DNA of 64,000 nt. Origin: Octopus bimaculoides (lineage: Eukaryota). The position numbers and the translations under genes are program-made. Shown here piece after piece: positions 4,397-64,000 of this stretch (the stretch's first letter is position 1; every line of letters starts with the position of its first letter). The stretch lies in NCBI RefSeq assembly GCF_001194135.2, contig NC_068989.1, positions 81,454,729 through 81,518,728 of the forward strand. Direction: 5' to 3'. Below the pieces are notes generated by a model that did no database searches, was not told the origin of the DNA, and saw nothing but the letters and a program-made list of their open reading frames with translations.

Positions 4397-4934
4397 TTTA
4401 AAAACTTTTGTAAAAATTACTTGATACAATTATAATGATTAGAAAAAGATTCTTTTAAAAGTTATTAACTTAATTAACAAAACCTTTGTGGAAGAATTTT
4501 TCATATACTATTTATATCTAGTGTGCATTTTGTGTGTAAGCACTTTCATTTTTCAACTTTGCAAACACTTATGTTCTGGACTAATGCATGAATATGAACC
4601 ACAACAGCTTACATTCATCCAAATGATACCTCCTGACAATTCTACATCAATTGTCAAATCTCCAACGAATAATTTTTTGAAAATCACTAATCATCAACAG
4701 CCAAAGACAACCATCAAATCTCAAGAGAACTCTTACAGATGAGAGATTTACCGAATGTAATAATGTCTTATGGTTGAGTTGATTTTTTTGTATTTCCCTG
4801 AAGAGAAGATTACATCTTTCTCAACATCACTCATTCCTTTGGAATGAACCAATTGTAATCTTCGAAACATATGTCGGAAATAAAAGAAATCATTTAACAC
4901 ATGCGTATAATTCCATTTATTTAATCTTATATAT

Positions 4935-4979
<45 letters not shown>

Positions 4980-23707: not shown

Positions 23708-24872
23708 TTAAATATTAATTTCATAATTTCATGATACAAATAGAATGGCCATGACTAGAATATTCATTCAATCTTCTTTCAAAGGAGAGCTCAACTGAGC
23801 TGGCTGGCTGGGAGGAGATAGGTAGGGAAAGGGTCAACTCCAAGAACAACAATGAAAAATATATATTAGAGGTACAGTTATGAGAGTCATAACAGCAGCT
23901 GTATCTCATTACTGTTTAAGTTGATCATTATTCAAGAAATAATATCTTAACAGAAAAGTTTTTAATTAATTAGAGCCAGGCTTTGTTTTTGTTCAATGGC
24001 ATCAATAATTGACTTTCTGCTGTTGGTATTTAAGCAAAATGCTTGGTACCATTCCAAGTCCAACTTTCATACAGATTTAATAGGATTAAATATATTCAAA
24101 TGAAAAACAACAGTTAATTAATTTGTGAAGCAAGCAAGTTAGGTAGTGCATAGACAGTGCCGAAGAAAAAAAAAAACTATACCGTGTCTAAAATTATTTG
24201 TATTCATGCAGGGATTAATGGTAATGATAACAAAAATCAGTGATGAGTTCAATTCAGATTATTAACTAGAGACATGGAGACTGACATATATAACAAAAGT
24301 GAACAACTGACAACTTAAGCTCTATGTCTGCGTCTCAGTGAAATTCTGTGTATGTTTTTGTGTATAAACACACTCACACACACACAAACATATATANNNN
24401 NNNNNNNNNNNNNNNNNNNNNNNNNNNNNNNNNNNNNNNNNNNNNNNNNNNNNNNNNNNNNNNNNNNNNNNNNNNNNNNNNNNNNNNNNNNNNNNNNNNN
24501 NNNNNNNNNNNNNNNNNNNNNNNNNNNNNNNNNNNNNNNNNNNNNNNNNNNNNNNNNNNNNNNNNNNNNNNNNNNNNNNNNNNNNNNNNNNNNNNNNNNN
24601 NNNNNNNNNNNNNNNNNNNNNNNNNNNNNNNNNNNNNNNNNNNNNNNNNNNNNNNNNNNNNNNNNNNNNNNNNNNNNNNNNNNNNNNNNNNNNNNNNNNN
24701 NNNNNNNNNNNNNNNNNNNNNNNNNNNNNNNNNNNNNNNTCCACGTTCAGTCTTACTATGTGGCACTTTTAGTGTTTTCTACTGTAGCCCTGGGTTGCCC
24801 AAAACCTTGTGAGTGGATTTGATAGATGGAAGCTGAAGGGGTCTTGTTGTGCATGTGTGTGTATGTGAGTAA

Positions 24873-25724: not shown

Positions 25725-27830
25725 TCACTGCAATATTGTCTCAACATCCAGGTCTTTCTTCTTTTTCTTTGCTGACTTTAATCTTGAAGCAGTTTTTGGT
25801 CGTCCTAATTTATTACCTTTAGCAGAGTTTAGTCTCATACTCTGAGTAGCTCCTTCTTTTGTGTAGGCAAGATAGACTCCAGAGATGTCAGATTCATTAA
25901 AGCTAGCTGATAGACTTTCAGTATGCGGTGACTGTTTGCGCATATTGTTCCCTGTGTATGCAACACATTTTAGCTGCCATTCCCCAATATCGTCATTCCA
26001 GTGAACATAGTGTTCCAACATTTTCTGGAATTCCATAGGAATGAAATTGTCAATAATCAGCATTTGAAGCTTCAATTCTCGGCTGAGCTGGCGAACATTT
26101 TCAAGCAGACCTTCCATTTCTCTCTGGTGGTCTTTTTGTACATCAGTAATTTCAATCTTAGCTTGTGTGTACATAGACCAGCATTTCTTGAGTTTTTTGG
26201 TTTTACCAATAATTTCTTCCTGCAAAGTGGAATATTTTTCTTCTATATCCAATCTTTCTTGTTCTTTTTCTTCTAAAGCTTTCCGTAGTTCTTCTTCTCT
26301 CTTCTTCCTTTCTTCTAACTCACAGGCACTTTCTTCCAATAGTCGTTCTTGTTCTTCAGCCTTTTCTAAAAGATTCTCACCACCAACAATAATTTTCTTC
26401 TCTATCACAGCTAACTTTTGTGCCAATTGGTGTTGTTCTTCTAAATACTTCTTCATCTCAGACTCTTTCTCATCAAGATTATATTTTATTTTCTTTCTCT
26501 CCTCTTCTGCTAAATCTTTCTTTTCTTCCAGCATTTTGCGATCATCTTCAATCTTAGACTGAATTTCAGCCATTTTTTCTTTAGAAATTTTATGTGTCTT
26601 TTTTATTTTTTTATTGCAGCTTTTCCCATCTTTCTCAATAATTTCTTCATTTCCACCAGACACATCATCATCATTATTAAACTCACCTTCTTCAAGTTGC
26701 CGTTTTAATTCTTTAATTTCTTCCTGAAATTGCCGAAGCAAAGCATCTTTTGGATCTTCGTTAACCTTAGCTTTGTTCTTTATACATTTTGCTCTGTTGG
26801 CATACCTCAGAGTGCTAATGGTCTCATCATAGTTATAATCTGCTGGACCAATATTGGCAATCATTACTGTTTTTGAGTTACCGCCAAGGGAATCTTGCAA
26901 CAAACGTGTCAGTTTGGAATTTCTGTAAGGAATATGGCTACTTTTCCCATCAACTAATGCAGAGATCACATTGCCAAGGGTAGAAAGAGATAAATTAATT
27001 TTTGTAGCTTCTTTAAGTCGCTGACCGGTAGCACCTGTTTTTGCTTGACGTTCAGAGCCTGCTAAGTCAACGAGATGAAGTTTCCCCATTCGGACATGTT
27101 GTTTTCCATCAATACCTTTCTCACTACATTCAATGGTCAAGGAGAAAATAGCATGAGACCGGGAACTGTGAGCATTCATATTAGTAGCACCCACAACCCG
27201 ATTTTTGTTCCCTAGTGTCATGATCCGATCCATATCGTCGGCATTATTTACAACAAAAGCAGAAAGGTCCTTCACGTAAACACCAATGTCAGGCCTCTCT
27301 TTAACCTCAAGCCGTTGCATTTGGTCCTTACCAAGCAAATCACGCACTTCTTCATTATAAATCTCTAGATAAGATACTCTTACCAAGAACTGAGTTTCAC
27401 CCTCAGCTTTAGCAATGGCACCAAATATATGAGCAAATGAATTAGGAATAATGCCCCGCTTTTCTGCCACTACCCTGAGGCCCTCCATTGTGAACGTTTT
27501 GCCTGTTCCAGTCTGGCCATATGCAAAAATTGTTCCATTGTAACCAGCAAGAACTGAATCAATAATAGGGCGAGCAACCTCATTATAAACATCAACCTGT
27601 TTGCAATCATGTCCAAATACAGTATCAAATGTATAAACCTTCATAGGTTCACCATGGCCCGGGGTAGGGTTTTCTACTGAGACTGTTCCTCTTACAGAAT
27701 CGACAAAAACTGTCTGCTTACATTCTGAAGAAATTTCTTTTTCATTGAGTGGCCGACAGCGAACAGCTACCTTTACATTATCGCTGTTGTCACCACCAAC
27801 CTTACCTTCCACTAACTTATTCACTTTCAT
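25725..27830 (-). CDS. KIF3A: Kinesin-2 motor subunit KIF3A, 701 aa, single-exon CDS
   Basis: P-loop GQTGTGKT, switch I SSRSH and switch II DLAGSE. KIF3A-specific stalk and tail: [55 protein letters not shown]. An in-frame TAA lies 9 codons upstream of the ATG. Confidence 0.98.
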
Positions 27831-28147
27831 ATTTCTGCTTCTATGTCTTATTTCTTATTGTTCATAGCTCTCGTCATAAAATCAGCCGTCACGGGATGTA
27901 ACATCGACTGTTACTGTGTTGTAACATCGGCTGTTACCATGATGTAACATCAATTATTACTGTGGTATAACATCAGTTGTAATTGTGGTGTAATATGAAC
28001 ATTCACTGTGTTGTAACATTAACTGCGACTGTTTTGTAACATCAGCTGTGACTATGTTGTAACATCAACTGCGACTGTTTTGTAACATCAGCTGTTACTA
28101 CTGTTGCGATTGTCGAATAACATCAGCTCTTTCTCCAGTGAAACAAT
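27831..28147 (-). other. Putative KIF3A 5' leader within the coding exon
   Basis: Acceptor tcattttatttcttttattacag| at 28148-28150. No good pyrimidine-tract acceptor lies closer to the ATG. Confidence 0.6.
27898..28105. repeat. 23-bp minisatellite, about 9 copies (gtaacatcagctgtgactatgtt-like)
   Basis: Units aligned by hand. Eight are 23 nt and one is 24 nt. Confidence 0.9.
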
Positions 28148-28953
28148 CTGTAATAAAAGAAATAAAATGAAATTGGATAAGATACAATATTTAACAACAA
28201 CAATAACAACACCAAATGCTTAAAGACAATGTTTTCTGCTAAGCTTTGCAGACCCCTTTTGACAGTCTCTTCCATTTTACCCTACTTTATACATCCATTC
28301 TCCAAAGCCTTTGCCTGGTTCTCCTCCTCCATCTATTTATATATTCTTTTATGTGTCTATTCTTTTACAAGTTTGTATCACTGGGCTATGGCCAAGCTGG
28401 GGCACAGCTTTCAATCATTTAGGTGATCATATTGACTCCATTATTTATTTCAGTCTTTGAACTATTATGGAAATTATAAAATTATATCACAAATTCACCT
28501 TTGATTTTACTGGTTAATGAAGAAAACCCTTATGTCACTGCTTGACAGGCTAGAAATAGCAGCCAAATTTCCTGCATATCACACAATACTGTCTAAAAAA
28601 AAGTAAGATATATATCTGTATACATGGCTTATATTTAAGAATTTAAAAGATTTTATCACATCCATTCAGTTCCAGAAGCTATTTTAGGATAAAGATAAAC
28701 CAGCTGACAAGATAAGTCACTCTAAATTCCTTCATATATCTAATGTGTAGGGAGGTGAGGTAAACATTTAACAAGATAGTGACACACATATACACACTAA
28801 TATTGTCACTGCTGTCATCATCATCATCATCATCAATGTAAATATCTAAGTGAATGTAGGTATATGTCAGTTAACCTCTAAATAAGTAACTGCTGTGAAA
28901 CATGGAAACATCACAAGTGATGAAGTAAAAGATATGTGGGGATATTATCAGAT

Positions 28954-29046
28954 GGTGATACCACTTATCTGGTGATACCATTTAATTGGTAATATCATTA
29001 CCTTGTGATACCATCAGCTGATGATACCATTTACTTGGTGATTTCA
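28954..29046. repeat. ~17-bp minisatellite, about 6 copies (ggtgataccatttaatt-like)
   Basis: Direct inspection. Confidence 0.75.
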
Positions 29047-29137
29047 TTAAAATAATGAATGAAAATAACAAATGTCAGTCTAGCAACAAGATGCAATATA
29101 CTGTGTGTTAAGAATATCAAAACAACTGTACCATGAT

Positions 29138-29400
29138 AATACAGTATTATATAGTGATAGTACAGTACTATATGATGACAGTGCAGTACTATATAGTAGT
29201 AGTACAGTACTATACAGTACAGTACTGTATAGTGATACTACAGTAATATACAAAAATAGTACAGTACTATACAGTGATAGCACAGTACTATATAGTGACA
29301 GTACAGTATTATATTGTGATAGTATAGAACAGGAATAGTATAATACTACACAGTGATACCACCATATAAAGGTAGTACAGTTGTATACTAAAGAAATAGT
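29138..29400. repeat. 21-bp minisatellite (agtacagtactatatagtgat-like), about 10-12 degenerate copies
   Basis: The translation shows a 7-aa period (STVLYSD). Confidence 0.85.
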
Positions 29401-35490: not shown

Positions 35491-35961
35491 GCATTGCAAT
35501 ACTAATAATCTGGTGTAGAACTCAATATATGTATGCCTCTAAATGAAGCATTAGTTGAGTACTGAGCAACACTTCATGTTTGAGATGAGATTCTGATGAA
35601 ACTGTAATGTGTTATTCAAGCACTCAACTATGGAGTCTGCCACATGTTACAGAGGAAACAGCTGTAACCTAATGAAGTCCATGAGATAATGGTTTGCTCC
35701 TTTCTCATCTCATTTCTTTTATATATATATATATATATNNNNNNNNNNNNNNNNNNNNNNNNNNNNNNNNNNNNNNNNNNNNNNNNNNNNNNNNNNNNNN
35801 NNNNNNNNNNNNNNNNNNNNNNNNNNNNNNNNNNNNNNNNNNNNNNNNNNNNNNNNNNNNNNNNNNNNNNNNNNNNNNNNNNNNNNNNNNNNNNNNNNNN
35901 NNNNNNNNNNNNNNNNNNNNNNNNNNNNNNNNNNNNNNNNNNNNNNNNNNNNNNNNNNNNN

Positions 35962-41290: not shown

Positions 41291-42709
41291 AATATATATA
41301 TATATATATATATATTTAACAGAAAATGTTGTATATGAATGTGTCTATGTATGTGTGAGTGTGGGGGTGTGATAACAGAACAATATAGTATCCATACCTG
41401 TAATGATTTTAGAACTCCCTCCCCACACAAATGAACCAAACAACCTCTCATGCACTACACCTGCTTTTCCTCCACCATACCATGTCTTTTTCTTGTCCTC
41501 CCCTTGTCAACTGTATCATGACAATCAACTTCTTTTATAGTTGCAGGCTGCATCCCGTTCTGCTCCACATACAATCTTGTAATAGTTCCACCCACTTCTA
41601 CTTACCTTGTGCCTTAAGGGGCCACCTGGACACCTAATCTCCATTATCTATCTCTTGCAGTTCCAACTTATCATTTTCCTTCTCCCCTACTAAATGTGAG
41701 TAACCATACTGGCTCTTCTACAAGAACTTGCTCTGACCCCCACCACTTTCTATCATACTTTAAGCTCTCATCCCTTAGCATAAAGTCAATCCCCTCCCTC
41801 AGAGTTCATAGTCTTGTGAGCTGCATGACAACCTCACTAGTGCAAGTAGCCACCCAAAAAAGCTGCAAAGTGGTTGACTTTAGGTAGGGTATCCAGTCAT
41901 TAAAAATCATGCTTAAGCAGACAATAGAGAACAATGCAATCGTTGGACCCATCAGAACCTGTCCAGCCCATGCCAGCATGGAACATGGACTTTAAATGAT
42001 GATGATGATAACAGCATCGTACTGTTGTTGATGTTTAGCCCAAATCCTACCCAGTACAGACCGATGATCAAAGGGATTCCGGCACTAGTCATCGCCATCC
42101 TGTCCTTGTCTTGAGCATTAGATATCAGGGACTATTATGCAATGCACCCTACTTTTTTTTAAGACCTTGAACAATTATTTGAGGGAAATTTGGCTACTTT
42201 CCTTAACAAAGAAAATGATCGTGTACTTGCTTAGCTCCAGGTCAACTCTGATCGAGGAGAACCATAACTAACTACCAATATATCTTAAATCTTAGTGAAA
42301 GGCATTTCATTGCTGAAATATTAGTATGTAGCGTGGCACAAGAATACCTTTACATTCATCTGTACGCATGTATCTGTCATGTTGCATTTAAACAATAGAG
42401 TAACGTGGGTAGGGATGAATTAGAAACAATAATCCAGCTTGGCCACAATTCAACGATTAAAACCAATAAAAAAACGTACGTACACACACACACAAAGAGA
42501 GAGAGAGACTATCTAGCCAGGTACACAGGCAAACCAGTGCTAATATAAAACATTATATTATTCTAAGGTTAATGTGTATATCAATGCATATAAAAATGTA
42601 GAGTTATATTTCTATAAAGTTTTAACATACGTAGCAGAAAATATCTGAAACTGAAAACAGGAGAAAGTAGCAAGCTTGAAATGATGAAGATGACAACGAT
42701 AGTTCATAC

Positions 42710-42995
42710 CTGTGTTGCTATGACAGTAACAACACTGTCAGTAGATCTATTGCACTAGATTACTGATCGATTTCACTACCTTGATTTCTCTTCTCTGTTG
42801 ATCCAAACGATATTTCTGTTAAGTGTTCGTCTGTCTTTCGCCTATCGGTCAGACAATCTGGCCAACCACAGAAATCAACTGTTGTCAACCGCTTCTCCGT
42901 GTATCACAGCAACGGCATAACAAGCTTTCAATACAAGCTTCCGGTATGTCTCAATGACGTCATTTCTCACGGAGATTGCCGGAAAGAGGCGAAAT
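42710..42995 (-). promoter_or_regulatory. Candidate promoter and non-coding first exon (possibly KIF3A)
   Basis: Locally CpG-rich, non-repetitive segment with TGACGTCA (CRE), two CCGGAA ETS-type sites, an X-box-like GTTGCTATGACAG (42714-42726) and a minus-strand CAG|GTATGA donor at 42710/42709. Confidence 0.5.
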
Positions 42996-44099
42996 TTTTA
43001 AGCTTATTTCCCTTGAATTTAAATTTTGTATTTTTAAAAATAGGTTTTTATTTAAAAAACACAATTGAAAAAAACGCAACCTTTTAAATTTATTATCGAC
43101 AGAAGTAAAAATGAATCGTCAAAACTTTTAAGCAAAGAATATTTAGAGATAATATTTTACGTACACAATACACTTTTTGTATTATTAGTTGAATATAAAA
43201 ATTAAAAACAATTTTTCTTTCTTAAATTCATTCATTAGGATAAAAAGTTTCTGCAAATAATTCAGTCGAAAAGGGATCGAAAAAGTTTAAAATGTGAACG
43301 ATATTGAACAACATTTATTACAGTATAATGTAATTTAAAATCATATCTTTTGATATCTCTTCACAGCAACTGAGATTATTTTAAATTCTATAAATTCAGA
43401 TTAATTTTTACACAACTTTTTACCACATTTGCTCAAATAGCATTGTCCTCCTGGTGCTATAACAACTGGCAAGTAGGGATTGTGTAGCCATATTGTATTT
43501 CAGAACAATTCCCTGATTGTTTTAGGCTTTCCCCTCTTTTCTTTTTCTCTTTTTCATTCAGTGAGTATATGTAAAAAAAAGTCAGACATCAGTCTTACAA
43601 CTGCTGTATACTTTACTATGTGATTAGATCATATTTATGAAGACAAGCTGAGTTGAAAACAATTTAGTGTTAGGTAGATCAAAAGTAGCTTTATTATAAA
43701 CACAAGTGACTGTTATTTTATGATGGAAGATCCAGACCTTGACTGGATAGCTCCGCAGAGATTTTCAATTACAACACTCCTTTACTCACACTCAGCTTGG
43801 CAATGGAGAATATGCAAAAAAGGTTTTCTTAGTATCTCAATGAAAGCAATATAACTTTGGATCATTCATCTTCCACAATTTAACTAAGAAGGTTTTTTTT
43901 TTTATTCATTAAACATTTTAATAATTATTTCAGCTGTAATTTCTGCTCATGTTGTATCATGGAAATGTGTTGAGTTTCTTTCTCATTAGAAACAGTAGGA
44001 ATCTTCGTACAAGTGTTGTTGTTGCATCTCCTGCCAAAATGTTTTCTATCTCACAAACAACAATTCCAGATTTTAAAATCCTTGATTATTTGAAATCAA

Positions 44100-44560
44100 A
44101 AGATTTGACATAGACACGAAATAATCTGAAACAATGTAGAATAATATTTCTTAAAAGTTCAACCCCAATGATTGTTTTTGCACTTCCTGACACCAAGAAC
44201 ATACTTTGCTAGGGGAATGTTACTGCCACCTCTTCCAGAAATATGAGTCTAGTCTTTAGATTCACTTGTATCTCCTGGTCTGAGGTCTGATACAAAACAG
44301 AAAATTGGTCTCCCACAGCTACTTTCATCTTAGGAACCTTATCACCTTCCCTAAGGAATCTGATACCCTTGGGTAGTGATGGCTGCTGCAGGTCTTTCTG
44401 TTTGGCAATTTCTACAAGAACTTTGTCATACCTCCATTTCTATTGGCTTTCTCCCAGTACCCTGTGCATCTGGTTAAAATGTGGTTTGGAATGCAAGGAG
44501 TTGCTCCATGCTGCTTGTAGGACAGATTCTTCCTTTTGCCCAATATTTGAAGATTATTTG
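44100..44560 (-). mobile_element. Decayed RLE-type non-LTR retrotransposon C-terminus (HERO/NeSL-like)
   Basis: Q*KWRYDKVLVEIA...IRFLREG...TSDQEIQVNLKTRLIF...TFP*QSMFLVSGSAKTIIGVEL matches the QGRY.WRHD.VL..IA and RPD...K.I..IELT pattern. Confidence 0.55.
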
Positions 44561-63380: not shown

Positions 63381-63605
63381 AACAAAATAGTGAAATAATC
63401 ATATTTTAGGAGGCCAGTCTCATTGCATACAACTATCGAATGTGAAAAGTCTGATTCAAGATGTTGAAGACAAATGGGTTAATTTATCAGTCTTTTATCT
63501 AAATGCCAGAAAGATAAAAGATGTTGATTCTGAAACCTTAACAAGGTCACATCCCCTGGTGAAGAGGGTTGGCTTGCAAGGGTGCTGTGCTGGTGCCACA
63601 TAAAA

Positions 63606-64000
63606 AGCACTTGTGCCGGCGCCACGTGATAAGCACTTGTGCCGGCGCCACGTGATAAGCACTTGTGCCGGCGCCACGTGATAAGCACTTGTGCCGGCGC
63701 CACGTGATAAGCACTTGTGCCGGCGCCACGTGATAAGCACTTGTGCCGGCGCCACGTGATAAGCACTTGTGCCGGCGCCACGTGATAAGCACTTGTGCCG
63801 GCGCCACGTGATAAGCACTTGTGCCGGCGCCACGTGATAAGCACTTGTGTTGGTGCCAAGTACCACGTGATAAGCACTTGTGCCGGCGTCACGTAATAAG
63901 CACTTGTGCCGGCGTCACGTAATAAGCACTTGTGCCGGCGTCACGTAATAAGCACTTGTGCCGGCGTCACGTAATAAGCACTTGTGCCGGCGTCACGTAA
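63606..64000 (+). repeat. 26-bp tandem satellite, 15 units, running off the window
   Basis: The unit is gcacttgtgccggcgccacgtgataa. There are 10 units with CACGTG, one of them disrupted (~63841-63872), followed by 5 units of the variant gcacttgtgccggcgtcacgtaataa. Confidence 0.97.

What the first reader, a model, noticed from the sequence alone, without database searches (positions are those of the whole stretch)
27831..28147. KIF3A leader minisatellite encodes a chain of stop/start-overlapping uORFs
Seen: read on the mRNA strand, the 317-nt leader has 13 upstream ATGs. Because the unit is 23 nt (8 codons minus 1), most units give a 7-aa uORF whose stop overlaps the next start (TGATG/TAATG, six such junctions): MLFDNRNSSNS*, MLQNSRS*, MLQHSHS*, MLQNSRS*, MFILHHNYN*, MLYHSNN*. 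The last uORF (...MTRAMNNKK*) ends at 27848, 17 nt before the KIF3A ATG. Known: uORFs repress scanning, and UAAUG-type overlaps mediate termination-reinitiation in some viruses. Inference: repeat copy number could act as a translational dial or a ribosome relay for kinesin-2.
Basis: partly seen in the sequence, partly recalled or inferred. Interest (0 to 1): 0.75.

Follow-up and report, generated by a model that had tools for sequence, protein, structure and literature searches.

The report
Octopus KIF3A-like leader minisatellite with uORFs
A 23-base tandem repeat sits in the untranslated leader of an octopus kinesin-2 (KIF3A-like) gene and fills it with tiny upstream reading frames, but comparison with related species suggests a fast-changing by-product of the repeat rather than a selected translational switch.

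Summary
The 317-nt stretch 27831-28147 (minus strand) holds 13 ATGs, a 23-nt tandem array, six TGATG/TAATG stop-start junctions and the listed peptides. The window is Octopus bimaculoides. The gene is one of two old cephalopod KIF3A paralogues; it has an intron-less 701-aa CDS under strong purifying selection.

The proposed acceptor at 28148 is supported. It is conserved to Argonauta, a related species has a cDNA-like contig spliced at the homologous site, and an O. vulgaris gene model splices into it.

The functional reading is not supported:
- The chain follows arithmetically from one pentamer (TGATG) in a unit of length 3n+2.
- ATG and TGA positions are no better conserved than other unit positions, within the array or between species.
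- O. sinensis has lost array ATGs.
- The degenerate Argonauta array has no junctions.
- Two more distant orthologues have a ~50-nt leader with no array and no uATG.
- The TURBS core motif is absent.

Copy number does differ between species, in multiples of 23. Best reading: an octopod-specific 5'-UTR minisatellite, probably damping translation, tolerated through leaky scanning past weak-context uATGs. Transcript data are still needed.

The parts
25725..27830 (-). Intron-less CDS (701 aa plus stop) of a KIF3A-like kinesin-2 motor, the cephalopod-specific paralogue that begins MKVNKL
   Evidence: Single ORF. Hits are 98% O. vulgaris/sinensis, 91% Argonauta and 70-77% metazoan KIF3A, with Pfam PF00225 and PF16796. 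dN/dS is 0.11 against O. vulgaris and 0.047 against Argonauta.
27831..28147 (-). Leader part of the coding exon (317 nt) with 13 uATGs; 11 of the 13 have a pyrimidine at -3, whereas the main ATG has A at -3
27886..28092 (-). Nine in-register 23-nt units, consensus GTTGATGTTACAACACAGTAACA (TRF places the array at 27897-28099); a degenerate tenth unit lies 5' of it
27848..27865 (-). Proximal uORF ATGAACAATAAGAAATAA (MNNKK*), G at -3; its start, CTATGAACAA, is conserved in Argonauta, where it reads MNK*
28148..28172 (-). 3' splice site: pyrimidine-rich tract tttcattttatttcttttattac followed by AG (AG = 28149-28148)
   Evidence: Identical in O. vulgaris and O. sinensis. About 80 nt of the intron end is conserved in Argonauta although dS is 0.89. 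The homologous site is spliced in L005 and unspliced in L006-L011. The O. vulgaris model P0241 reads through it.
42710..42962 (-). Candidate promoter and first exon: a CpG-rich patch with CRE TGACGTCA (42962-42955) and ETS CCGGAAG (42944-42938). The exon ends CAACACAG at 42710, followed by the donor GTATGA.
   Evidence: CpG count is 13-14 per 300 nt against a window mean of 3.15. Sequence. The 8-nt CAACACAG flanked by AG and GT is the piece needed by the O. vulgaris model. The region is 96.5% identical to O. vulgaris over 404 nt. The transcription start was not determined.
44205..44328 (-). Upstream exon segment carrying the start of the O. vulgaris 66-aa 'hypothetical protein'. In O. bimaculoides codon 40 is TAG (44211-44209). 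The donor is CAAA|GTATGT at 44204.

Best explanation
This is an octopod-specific 23-nt minisatellite that arose inside an ancestrally short (~50 nt), ATG-free 5'-UTR segment. That segment lies between a conserved 3' splice site and the start codon of a KIF3A-like kinesin-2 gene.

The unit happens to contain TGATG and is 3n+2 long. Every intact copy is therefore a 7-codon uORF whose stop overlaps the next start, so the chain is a by-product of amplifying one unit. It is not a set of separately selected sites.

Inferred mechanism: the array lowers translation of the main ORF. Enough ribosomes still get through, because nearly all array uATGs are in weak context (pyrimidine at -3, U at +4) and are skipped by leaky scanning, and because 40S subunits can resume scanning after 7-codon uORFs. 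The main AUG has A at -3.

The array turns over quickly by gain and loss of whole units, without detectable constraint on the ATG or stop positions.

Shown: the anatomy, the copy-number differences between species, the lack of preferential ATG/TGA conservation, the absence of the array in more distant orthologues, and conservation of the acceptor. Inferred: inclusion of the whole array in the dominant mRNA, and the size and direction of the effect on translation.
For: - Array and uORFs are confirmed.
- Leader lengths are 317, 394 and 325 nt in O. bimaculoides, O. vulgaris and O. sinensis. Array indels are multiples of 23 (46 and 69 nt), and O. vulgaris carries a 69-nt higher-order duplication. 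O. vulgaris and O. sinensis differ by 3 units although their CDS dS is only 0.007.
- Unit positions of ATG and TGA are not the best conserved.
- Between species, ATG positions differ at 3/42 and 3/33 sites, against 31/259 and 20/205 for other leader positions. In the O. vulgaris-O. sinensis pair they differ more often: 4/39 against 5/272, p = 0.017.
- The putative 488-nt Argonauta leader has a degenerate array with 6 uATGs and no junction. L012 and the L005 cDNA-like contig have ~50-nt and 105-nt leaders with no ATG and no array.
- The other octopus paralogue has no array upstream.
- 11 of 13 uATGs lack a purine at -3; the main ATG context is AAATATGA.
- The CDS is under strong purifying selection, so the protein must be made.
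- The leader has no significant RNA structure: z = -1.75. There is no Rfam hit in the leader.
Against: - No O. bimaculoides transcript was available to show that the array is in the mature mRNA.
- GTTAC/GTAAC motifs are still recognisable at the same place in Argonauta although dS is 0.89. This needs either continued array turnover or some constraint on that motif.
- A full stop-start chain is uncommon among arrays: 1 of 22 array-strands in this window.
- Repeat alignments between species are ambiguous, so the site-wise tests are rough.
- Copy-number variation is exactly what a 'dial' would need, so the dial idea is not excluded.
Confidence: 0.62

Rival explanations
1. The uORF chain is a selected device: a copy-number-tunable translational resistor, or a ribosome relay that hands 40S subunits from uORF to uORF through UGAUG/UAAUG termination-reinitiation. 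It would set the level of this kinesin-2 subunit.
For: - Six overlapping junctions and 13 uATGs.
- Copy number differs between three Octopus species in whole units.
- Uniformly weak uATG contexts against a good main context.
- The chain is rare among the window's arrays.
- The gene is functional.
Against: - ATG and TGA positions are not preferentially conserved within the array or between species.
- O. sinensis lost two array ATGs. Argonauta has no junction. Distant orthologues have no array and no uATG.
- No UGGGA TURBS core is present.
- A 1-nt overlap gives no time to reacquire the ternary complex (review PMC5972666).
- All junctions derive from one amplified pentamer.
Confidence: 0.12
2. 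The array is largely absent from the translated mRNA. The dominant transcripts would start, or splice in, downstream of or within the array. Each unit carries a CTGAT branch-point-like motif followed by ACAG, and in the related species 6 of 7 contigs are unspliced at the acceptor. If so, the uORFs matter little.
For: - L006-L011 continue into the intron instead of splicing.
- No full-length Octopus transcript contig was found.
- A conserved gene with 13 or more uATGs is easier to understand if another leader exists.
- The unit sequence holds CAG repeatedly.
Against: - The acceptor and about 80 nt of intron end are conserved to Argonauta.
- The O. vulgaris model P0241 reads 69 nt into the leader from exactly this acceptor.
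- No pyrimidine tract precedes the AGs near the main ATG.
- L006-L011 may be genomic or pre-mRNA reads whose ends fall at repeats.
Confidence: 0.15
3. The constrained element is the GTTAC...GTAAC inverted motif, not the ATG or stop. It could be a repeated protein-binding site on DNA (an intronic or 5'-UTR enhancer) or on RNA, or a set of small hairpins. The uORFs would be incidental.
For: - TTA and the flanking A are the invariant unit positions.
- GTTAC (8 copies) and GTAAC (5 copies) persist in the Argonauta leader although ATGs do not and dS is 0.89.
Against: - The fold energy of the leader is not significantly below shuffles: z = -1.75.
- Only 3 of 9 O. bimaculoides units keep a perfect GTAACA arm.
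- No binding factor was identified, and the motif is absent from the more distant orthologues.
- Persistence can be explained by continuing unit turnover.
Confidence: 0.1

Closest known systems
Minisatellites (VNTRs) in 5' UTRs that alter expression
   Same: Head-to-tail 23-nt units, unit heterogeneity, a higher-order duplication, and copy-number differences between close relatives, all located in a 5' leader.
   Different: No expression data exist here. The unit itself encodes a complete uORF with an overlapping stop and start. I found no described case of that in a limited full-text search.
uORF-rich repressive leaders read by leaky scanning and reinitiation
   Same: Many short uORFs with weak-context uAUGs before a good-context main AUG, and a last uORF ending 17 nt before the main AUG.
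   Different: The uAUGs are copies of one site and are not conserved beyond neutral expectation. Only the proximal MNNKK/MNK uORF is shared with Argonauta.
Termination-reinitiation at UAAUG/UGAUG (calicivirus VP1/VP2, influenza B M1/BM2)
   Same: The same overlapping pentanucleotides.
   Different: Those systems follow long ORFs and need a TURBS with a UGGGA core pairing to 18S rRNA (PMC5972666). There is no UGGGA here, and the ORFs are 7 codons long.
GCN4/ATF4-type delayed reinitiation leaders
   Same: Several short uORFs ahead of a regulated main ORF.
   Different: Those depend on defined spacing between uORFs so that the ternary complex can be reacquired, and on conserved uORF positions. 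Here the spacing is -1 nt, and number and position vary between species.

Membership tests
Minisatellite / VNTR | Tandem head-to-tail units of about 10-100 bp | tested here: met
   TRF: period 23, 8.8 copies, 75% matches, no indels; nine units in exact 23-nt register.
Minisatellite / VNTR | Copy number differs between related genomes in whole units | tested here: met
   Leaders of 317, 394 and 325 nt. Array indels of 46 and 69 nt, plus one unrelated 31-nt indel near the 5' end of the leader. Within-species polymorphism was not testable.
uORF-controlled leader | AUGs with in-frame stops upstream of the main AUG | tested here: met
   13 uATGs, all closed before the main ATG.
uORF-controlled leader | The uORF-bearing sequence is part of the mature mRNA | tested here: inconclusive
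   The acceptor is conserved. The homologous acceptor is spliced in L005. O. vulgaris model P0241 runs from it 69 nt into the leader. No Octopus transcript covering the array was obtained.
uORF-controlled leader | uAUGs and stops conserved above the neutral background | tested here: not met
   Unit profile; between-species site test; losses in O. sinensis and Argonauta, absence in L005 and L012. Exception: the proximal ATGAACAA uORF is shared with Argonauta.
uORF-controlled leader | uORFs are translated and change main-ORF output | not testable with these tools
   Needs ribosome profiling or reporters.
TURBS-dependent termination-reinitiation | Overlapping stop-start (UAAUG/UGAUG/AUGA) | tested here: met
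   Six junctions.
TURBS-dependent termination-reinitiation | Motif 1 with a UGGGA core upstream of the junction, complementary to 18S rRNA helix 26 | tested here: not met
   No TGGGA in the O. bimaculoides or O. vulgaris leader; the requirement is as stated in PMC5972666.
GCN4/ATF4-type delayed reinitiation | Inter-uORF spacing that allows ternary-complex reacquisition, at conserved positions | tested here: not met
   Spacing is -1 nt at six junctions; number and position vary between species.
KIF3A (kinesin-2 motor subunit) | N-terminal kinesin motor domain and close full-length similarity to KIF3A across Metazoa | tested here: met
   PF00225 and PF16796; 70-77% identity over 96-98% of the length to named KIF3A proteins from molluscs to mammals.
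KIF3A (kinesin-2 motor subunit) | Single orthologue of KIF3A in the species | tested here: not met
   There are two paralogue groups in cephalopods, 79-82% identical between groups and at least 85% within. The other group keeps the molluscan MPENK N-terminus.

The most novel reading that the evidence does not exclude
The array is a heritable, copy-number-tunable 'uORF resistor'. Each added 23-nt unit adds one weak-context 7-codon uORF and lowers output of a cephalopod-specific kinesin-2 paralogue by a fixed fraction. Unit gain and loss would then give octopus lineages a fast way to retune the dosage of a ciliary or axonal transport motor.
Probability: 0.1. Interest if true: 0.6.

Novelty: new member of a known kind. 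Interest (0 to 1): 0.3.

Why it matters
If the array is in the mRNA, a conserved motor gene tolerates 13 or more upstream AUGs. That would make it a natural series of 11-15 uATGs across close species for measuring how many weak uORFs a leader can carry. It also warns annotators: the O. vulgaris 66-aa 'hypothetical protein' is most likely a leader uORF. As evidence for a designed translational device it is weak, because the comparative data point to neutral turnover.

Tried and rejected
- Retrogene idea. The CDS is intron-less, so I considered a recent retrocopy whose 'leader' would be flanking DNA. I rejected it as an explanation of the leader. The other paralogue is also intron-less. Orthologues down to 84% identity share the structure and a 5'-UTR intron. 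No poly(A) remnant is visible after the stop.\n- Search for Octopus transcript fragments with the N-terminal 126 aa found no near-identical fragment. Exact look-ups gave only genome records.\n- RNA structure of the leader: z = -1.75, not remarkable.\n- Rfam: nothing in the leader. Only sub-threshold miRNA-like hits (31.7 bits against a gathering score of 85) in the palindromic intronic 21-nt array.\n- The sigma-70 promoter and terminator scan does not apply to an animal genome and was ignored.\n- Searches failed on parameter limits. I got round them by doubling the 22-aa peptide.\n- timed out and was replaced by an identity matrix.\n- Reading the unit as E-box (CAGCTG), Myb (CAACTG) or RFX half-sites was only by eye and was not pursued.\n- I could not name the species behind L005-L012.

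Full report
**What is there.** Read on the minus strand, 27831-28147 is 317 nt. It is followed at 27830 by the ATG of a single uninterrupted 701-codon ORF, 25725-27830. The stretch holds exactly 13 ATGs. Three longer uORFs (20, 22 and 12 codons) that interrupt the chain were not listed. TRF reports a 23-nt array at 27897-28099 with 8.8 copies, 75% matches and no indels. Nine units sit in exact 23-nt register, and the unit occurs nowhere else in the window.

**Is it more than chance?**
- The ATG count alone is only mildly unusual: 13 against 8.6 +/- 2.05 in dinucleotide-preserving shuffles, with 69 of 2000 shuffles reaching 13.
- The chain is one coincidence amplified. The unit contains TGATG and its length is 3n+2, so the TGA of each unit lies exactly seven codons after the ATG of the previous one.
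- Such a chain is not common. Only this array-strand among 22 in the window has more than one junction.
- My own rough estimate (inference, not a computed result) is that about 1-2% of array-strands would show it. In a repeat-rich genome of this size, a few would then be expected in 5' UTRs by chance.

**Identity and context.**
- The window is Octopus bimaculoides, GCA_001194135.2, chromosome CM046609.1.
- The protein has a kinesin motor domain and is 70-77% identical over its full length to KIF3A from molluscs to mammals.
- Cephalopods have two paralogue groups. This one starts MKVNKL; it is 98% identical in O. vulgaris/sinensis, 91% in Argonauta hians, and 84% in two unnamed species. The other keeps the molluscan MPENK N-terminus. 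Identity is 79-82% between groups and at least 85% within them.
- The CDS is intron-less in all orthologues examined, and also in the other O. bimaculoides paralogue.
- The gene is under strong purifying selection: dN/dS is 0.11 against O. vulgaris (dS 0.078) and 0.047 against Argonauta (dS 0.89).

**Is the stretch really a leader?** Four lines of evidence support the proposed acceptor (AG at 28149-28148, preceded by a pyrimidine-rich tract).
- It is identical in the three Octopus species.
- About 80 nt of the intron end, including the tract and CAG, is still alignable with Argonauta although synonymous sites are near saturation.
- In the 84%-identity species, contig L005 departs from contigs L006-L011 exactly at the homologous CAG. 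This is the signature of a spliced against an unspliced copy.
- The O. vulgaris annotation contains a 66-aa 'hypothetical protein', P0241. Its last 22 codons are read from the first base after this acceptor to a TAA 69 nt into the leader. That annotation combined Iso-Seq and RNA-seq assemblies with ab initio predictions (PMC10700109), so the model is suggestive but not proof.

**Upstream exons.** The upstream part of P0241 maps in the window to 44328-44205, with donor CAAA|GTATGT. It also uses an 8-nt piece, CAACACAG (42717-42710), flanked by AG and GTATGA. In O. bimaculoides codon 40 of this ORF is TAG. It is therefore a further uORF and not a conserved protein.

The 8-nt piece ends a CpG-rich patch with 13-14 CpG per 300 nt, against a window mean of 3.15. 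The patch contains a perfect CRE (TGACGTCA) and ETS motifs. I take this to be the likely promoter and first exon, 14.6 kb upstream of the acceptor. That is an inference.

I found no Octopus transcript contig spanning the array. Inclusion of the array in the dominant mRNA remains unproven.

**Comparative test of the functional claim.**
- Leader lengths are 317 nt (13 uATG), 394 nt (15) and 325 nt (11) in O. bimaculoides, O. vulgaris and O. sinensis. Array indels are 46 and 69 nt, and O. vulgaris has a duplicated 69-nt three-unit block.
- O. vulgaris and O. sinensis differ by three units although their CDS dS is 0.007. The array turns over fast.
- Across the 19 distinct units (28 copies before removing duplicates), the invariant positions are A5, T8, T9, A10 and A12 of GTTGATGTTACAACACAGTAACA. 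The G of ATG (0.84) and the T and G of TGA (0.84, 0.79) are average.
- Between species, ATG positions change as often as other leader positions: 3/42 against 31/259, and 3/33 against 20/205. In O. vulgaris against O. sinensis they change more often: 4/39 against 5/272, p = 0.017. Alignment of repeats is ambiguous, which is a caveat on these counts.
- O. sinensis has ATA and ACG where the others have ATG.
- The putative 488-nt Argonauta leader keeps GTTAC and GTAAC motifs (8 and 5 copies) but has lost the period, has 6 uATGs and has no junction.
- The two 84%-identity orthologues have about 50 nt between acceptor and ATG, with no array and no ATG.
- The other paralogue has no array.

It is largely met. 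One exception deserves note: the proximal uORF start CTATGAACAA is shared by Octopus (MNNKK*) and Argonauta (MNK*).

**Mechanism.**
- Eleven of the 13 uATGs have a pyrimidine at -3, and only one has both a purine at -3 and G at +4. The main ATG has A at -3. By established scanning rules this favours leaky scanning past most array AUGs.
- Seven-codon uORFs are short enough for 40S subunits to resume scanning.
- Reinitiation at an AUG overlapping the stop is disfavoured, because the ternary complex must first be reacquired. The viral UAAUG/UGAUG systems need a TURBS with a UGGGA core (PMC5972666). The leader has no TGGGA.
- The leader is not unusually structured (z = -1.75) and matches no Rfam family.
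- The most likely net effect is damping of translation, not a relay. This is inferred and was not measured.

**Verdict.** The 'dial/relay' reading is unsupported by the comparative evidence and is not needed to explain the pattern. The feature is best filed as a lineage-specific, fast-evolving 5'-UTR minisatellite whose uORFs are incidental. A modest residual chance remains that copy number matters for dosage of this kinesin-2 paralogue.

Noticed in passing
window 25725-27830 (-) and L013:2001-4241: Both O. bimaculoides KIF3A paralogues have an intron-less coding sequence, as do orthologues in O. vulgaris, O. sinensis, Argonauta and two unnamed species. Each seems to keep an intron only in the 5' UTR. 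This suggests an old retroposition or intron loss before the duplication.
   Followed up: partly
window 42700-43100 (-): CpG-rich patch (13-14 CpG per 300 nt against a mean of 3.15) with a perfect CRE TGACGTCA (42962-42955) and ETS CCGGAAG (42944-42938). It is followed by a donor CAACACAG|GTATGA at 42710. Likely the promoter and first exon of the KIF3A-like gene, 14.6 kb upstream of the acceptor.
   Followed up: partly
window 44205-44328 (-); L016:1501-19260: The O. vulgaris annotated 66-aa 'hypothetical protein' (P0241) runs from an upstream exon through an 8-nt piece into the first 69 nt of the KIF3A-like leader. In O. bimaculoides its codon 40 is a stop (TAG 44211-44209). It looks like a leader uORF annotated as a gene.
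   Followed up: yes
window 28947-29049 and 29134-29324: Two more AT-rich minisatellites (17-nt, and 21-nt palindromic) lie in the intron within 1.2 kb of the acceptor, so three arrays cluster in 1.5 kb. The 21-nt array gives only sub-threshold miRNA-like Rfam matches (31.7 bits against a gathering score of 85).
   Followed up: partly
window 27848-27865 (-); L004:~4954-4965: A short uORF next to the main ATG (MNNKK* in Octopus, MNK* in Argonauta) has a conserved start, CTATGAACAA, although dS is 0.89. It is the only leader uORF with cross-genus conservation.
   Followed up: partly
window 63586-63998: GC-rich 26-nt array, 15.6 copies, 93% matches, unit TGTGCCGGCGCCACGTGATAAGCACT containing CACGTG. 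It has the highest CpG density in the window.
   Followed up: no
L012:~4600-4860 and L006:1-60: In the 84%-identity species the intron just upstream of the acceptor holds its own tandem repeat (GGTCAGGAAT.AAGACAAGC...). The Logan contigs L006-L011 all break there.
   Followed up: no
window ~24370-24740 and ~35740-35960: Two assembly gaps (runs of N) flank the locus. Neither touches the leader or the CDS.
   Followed up: no
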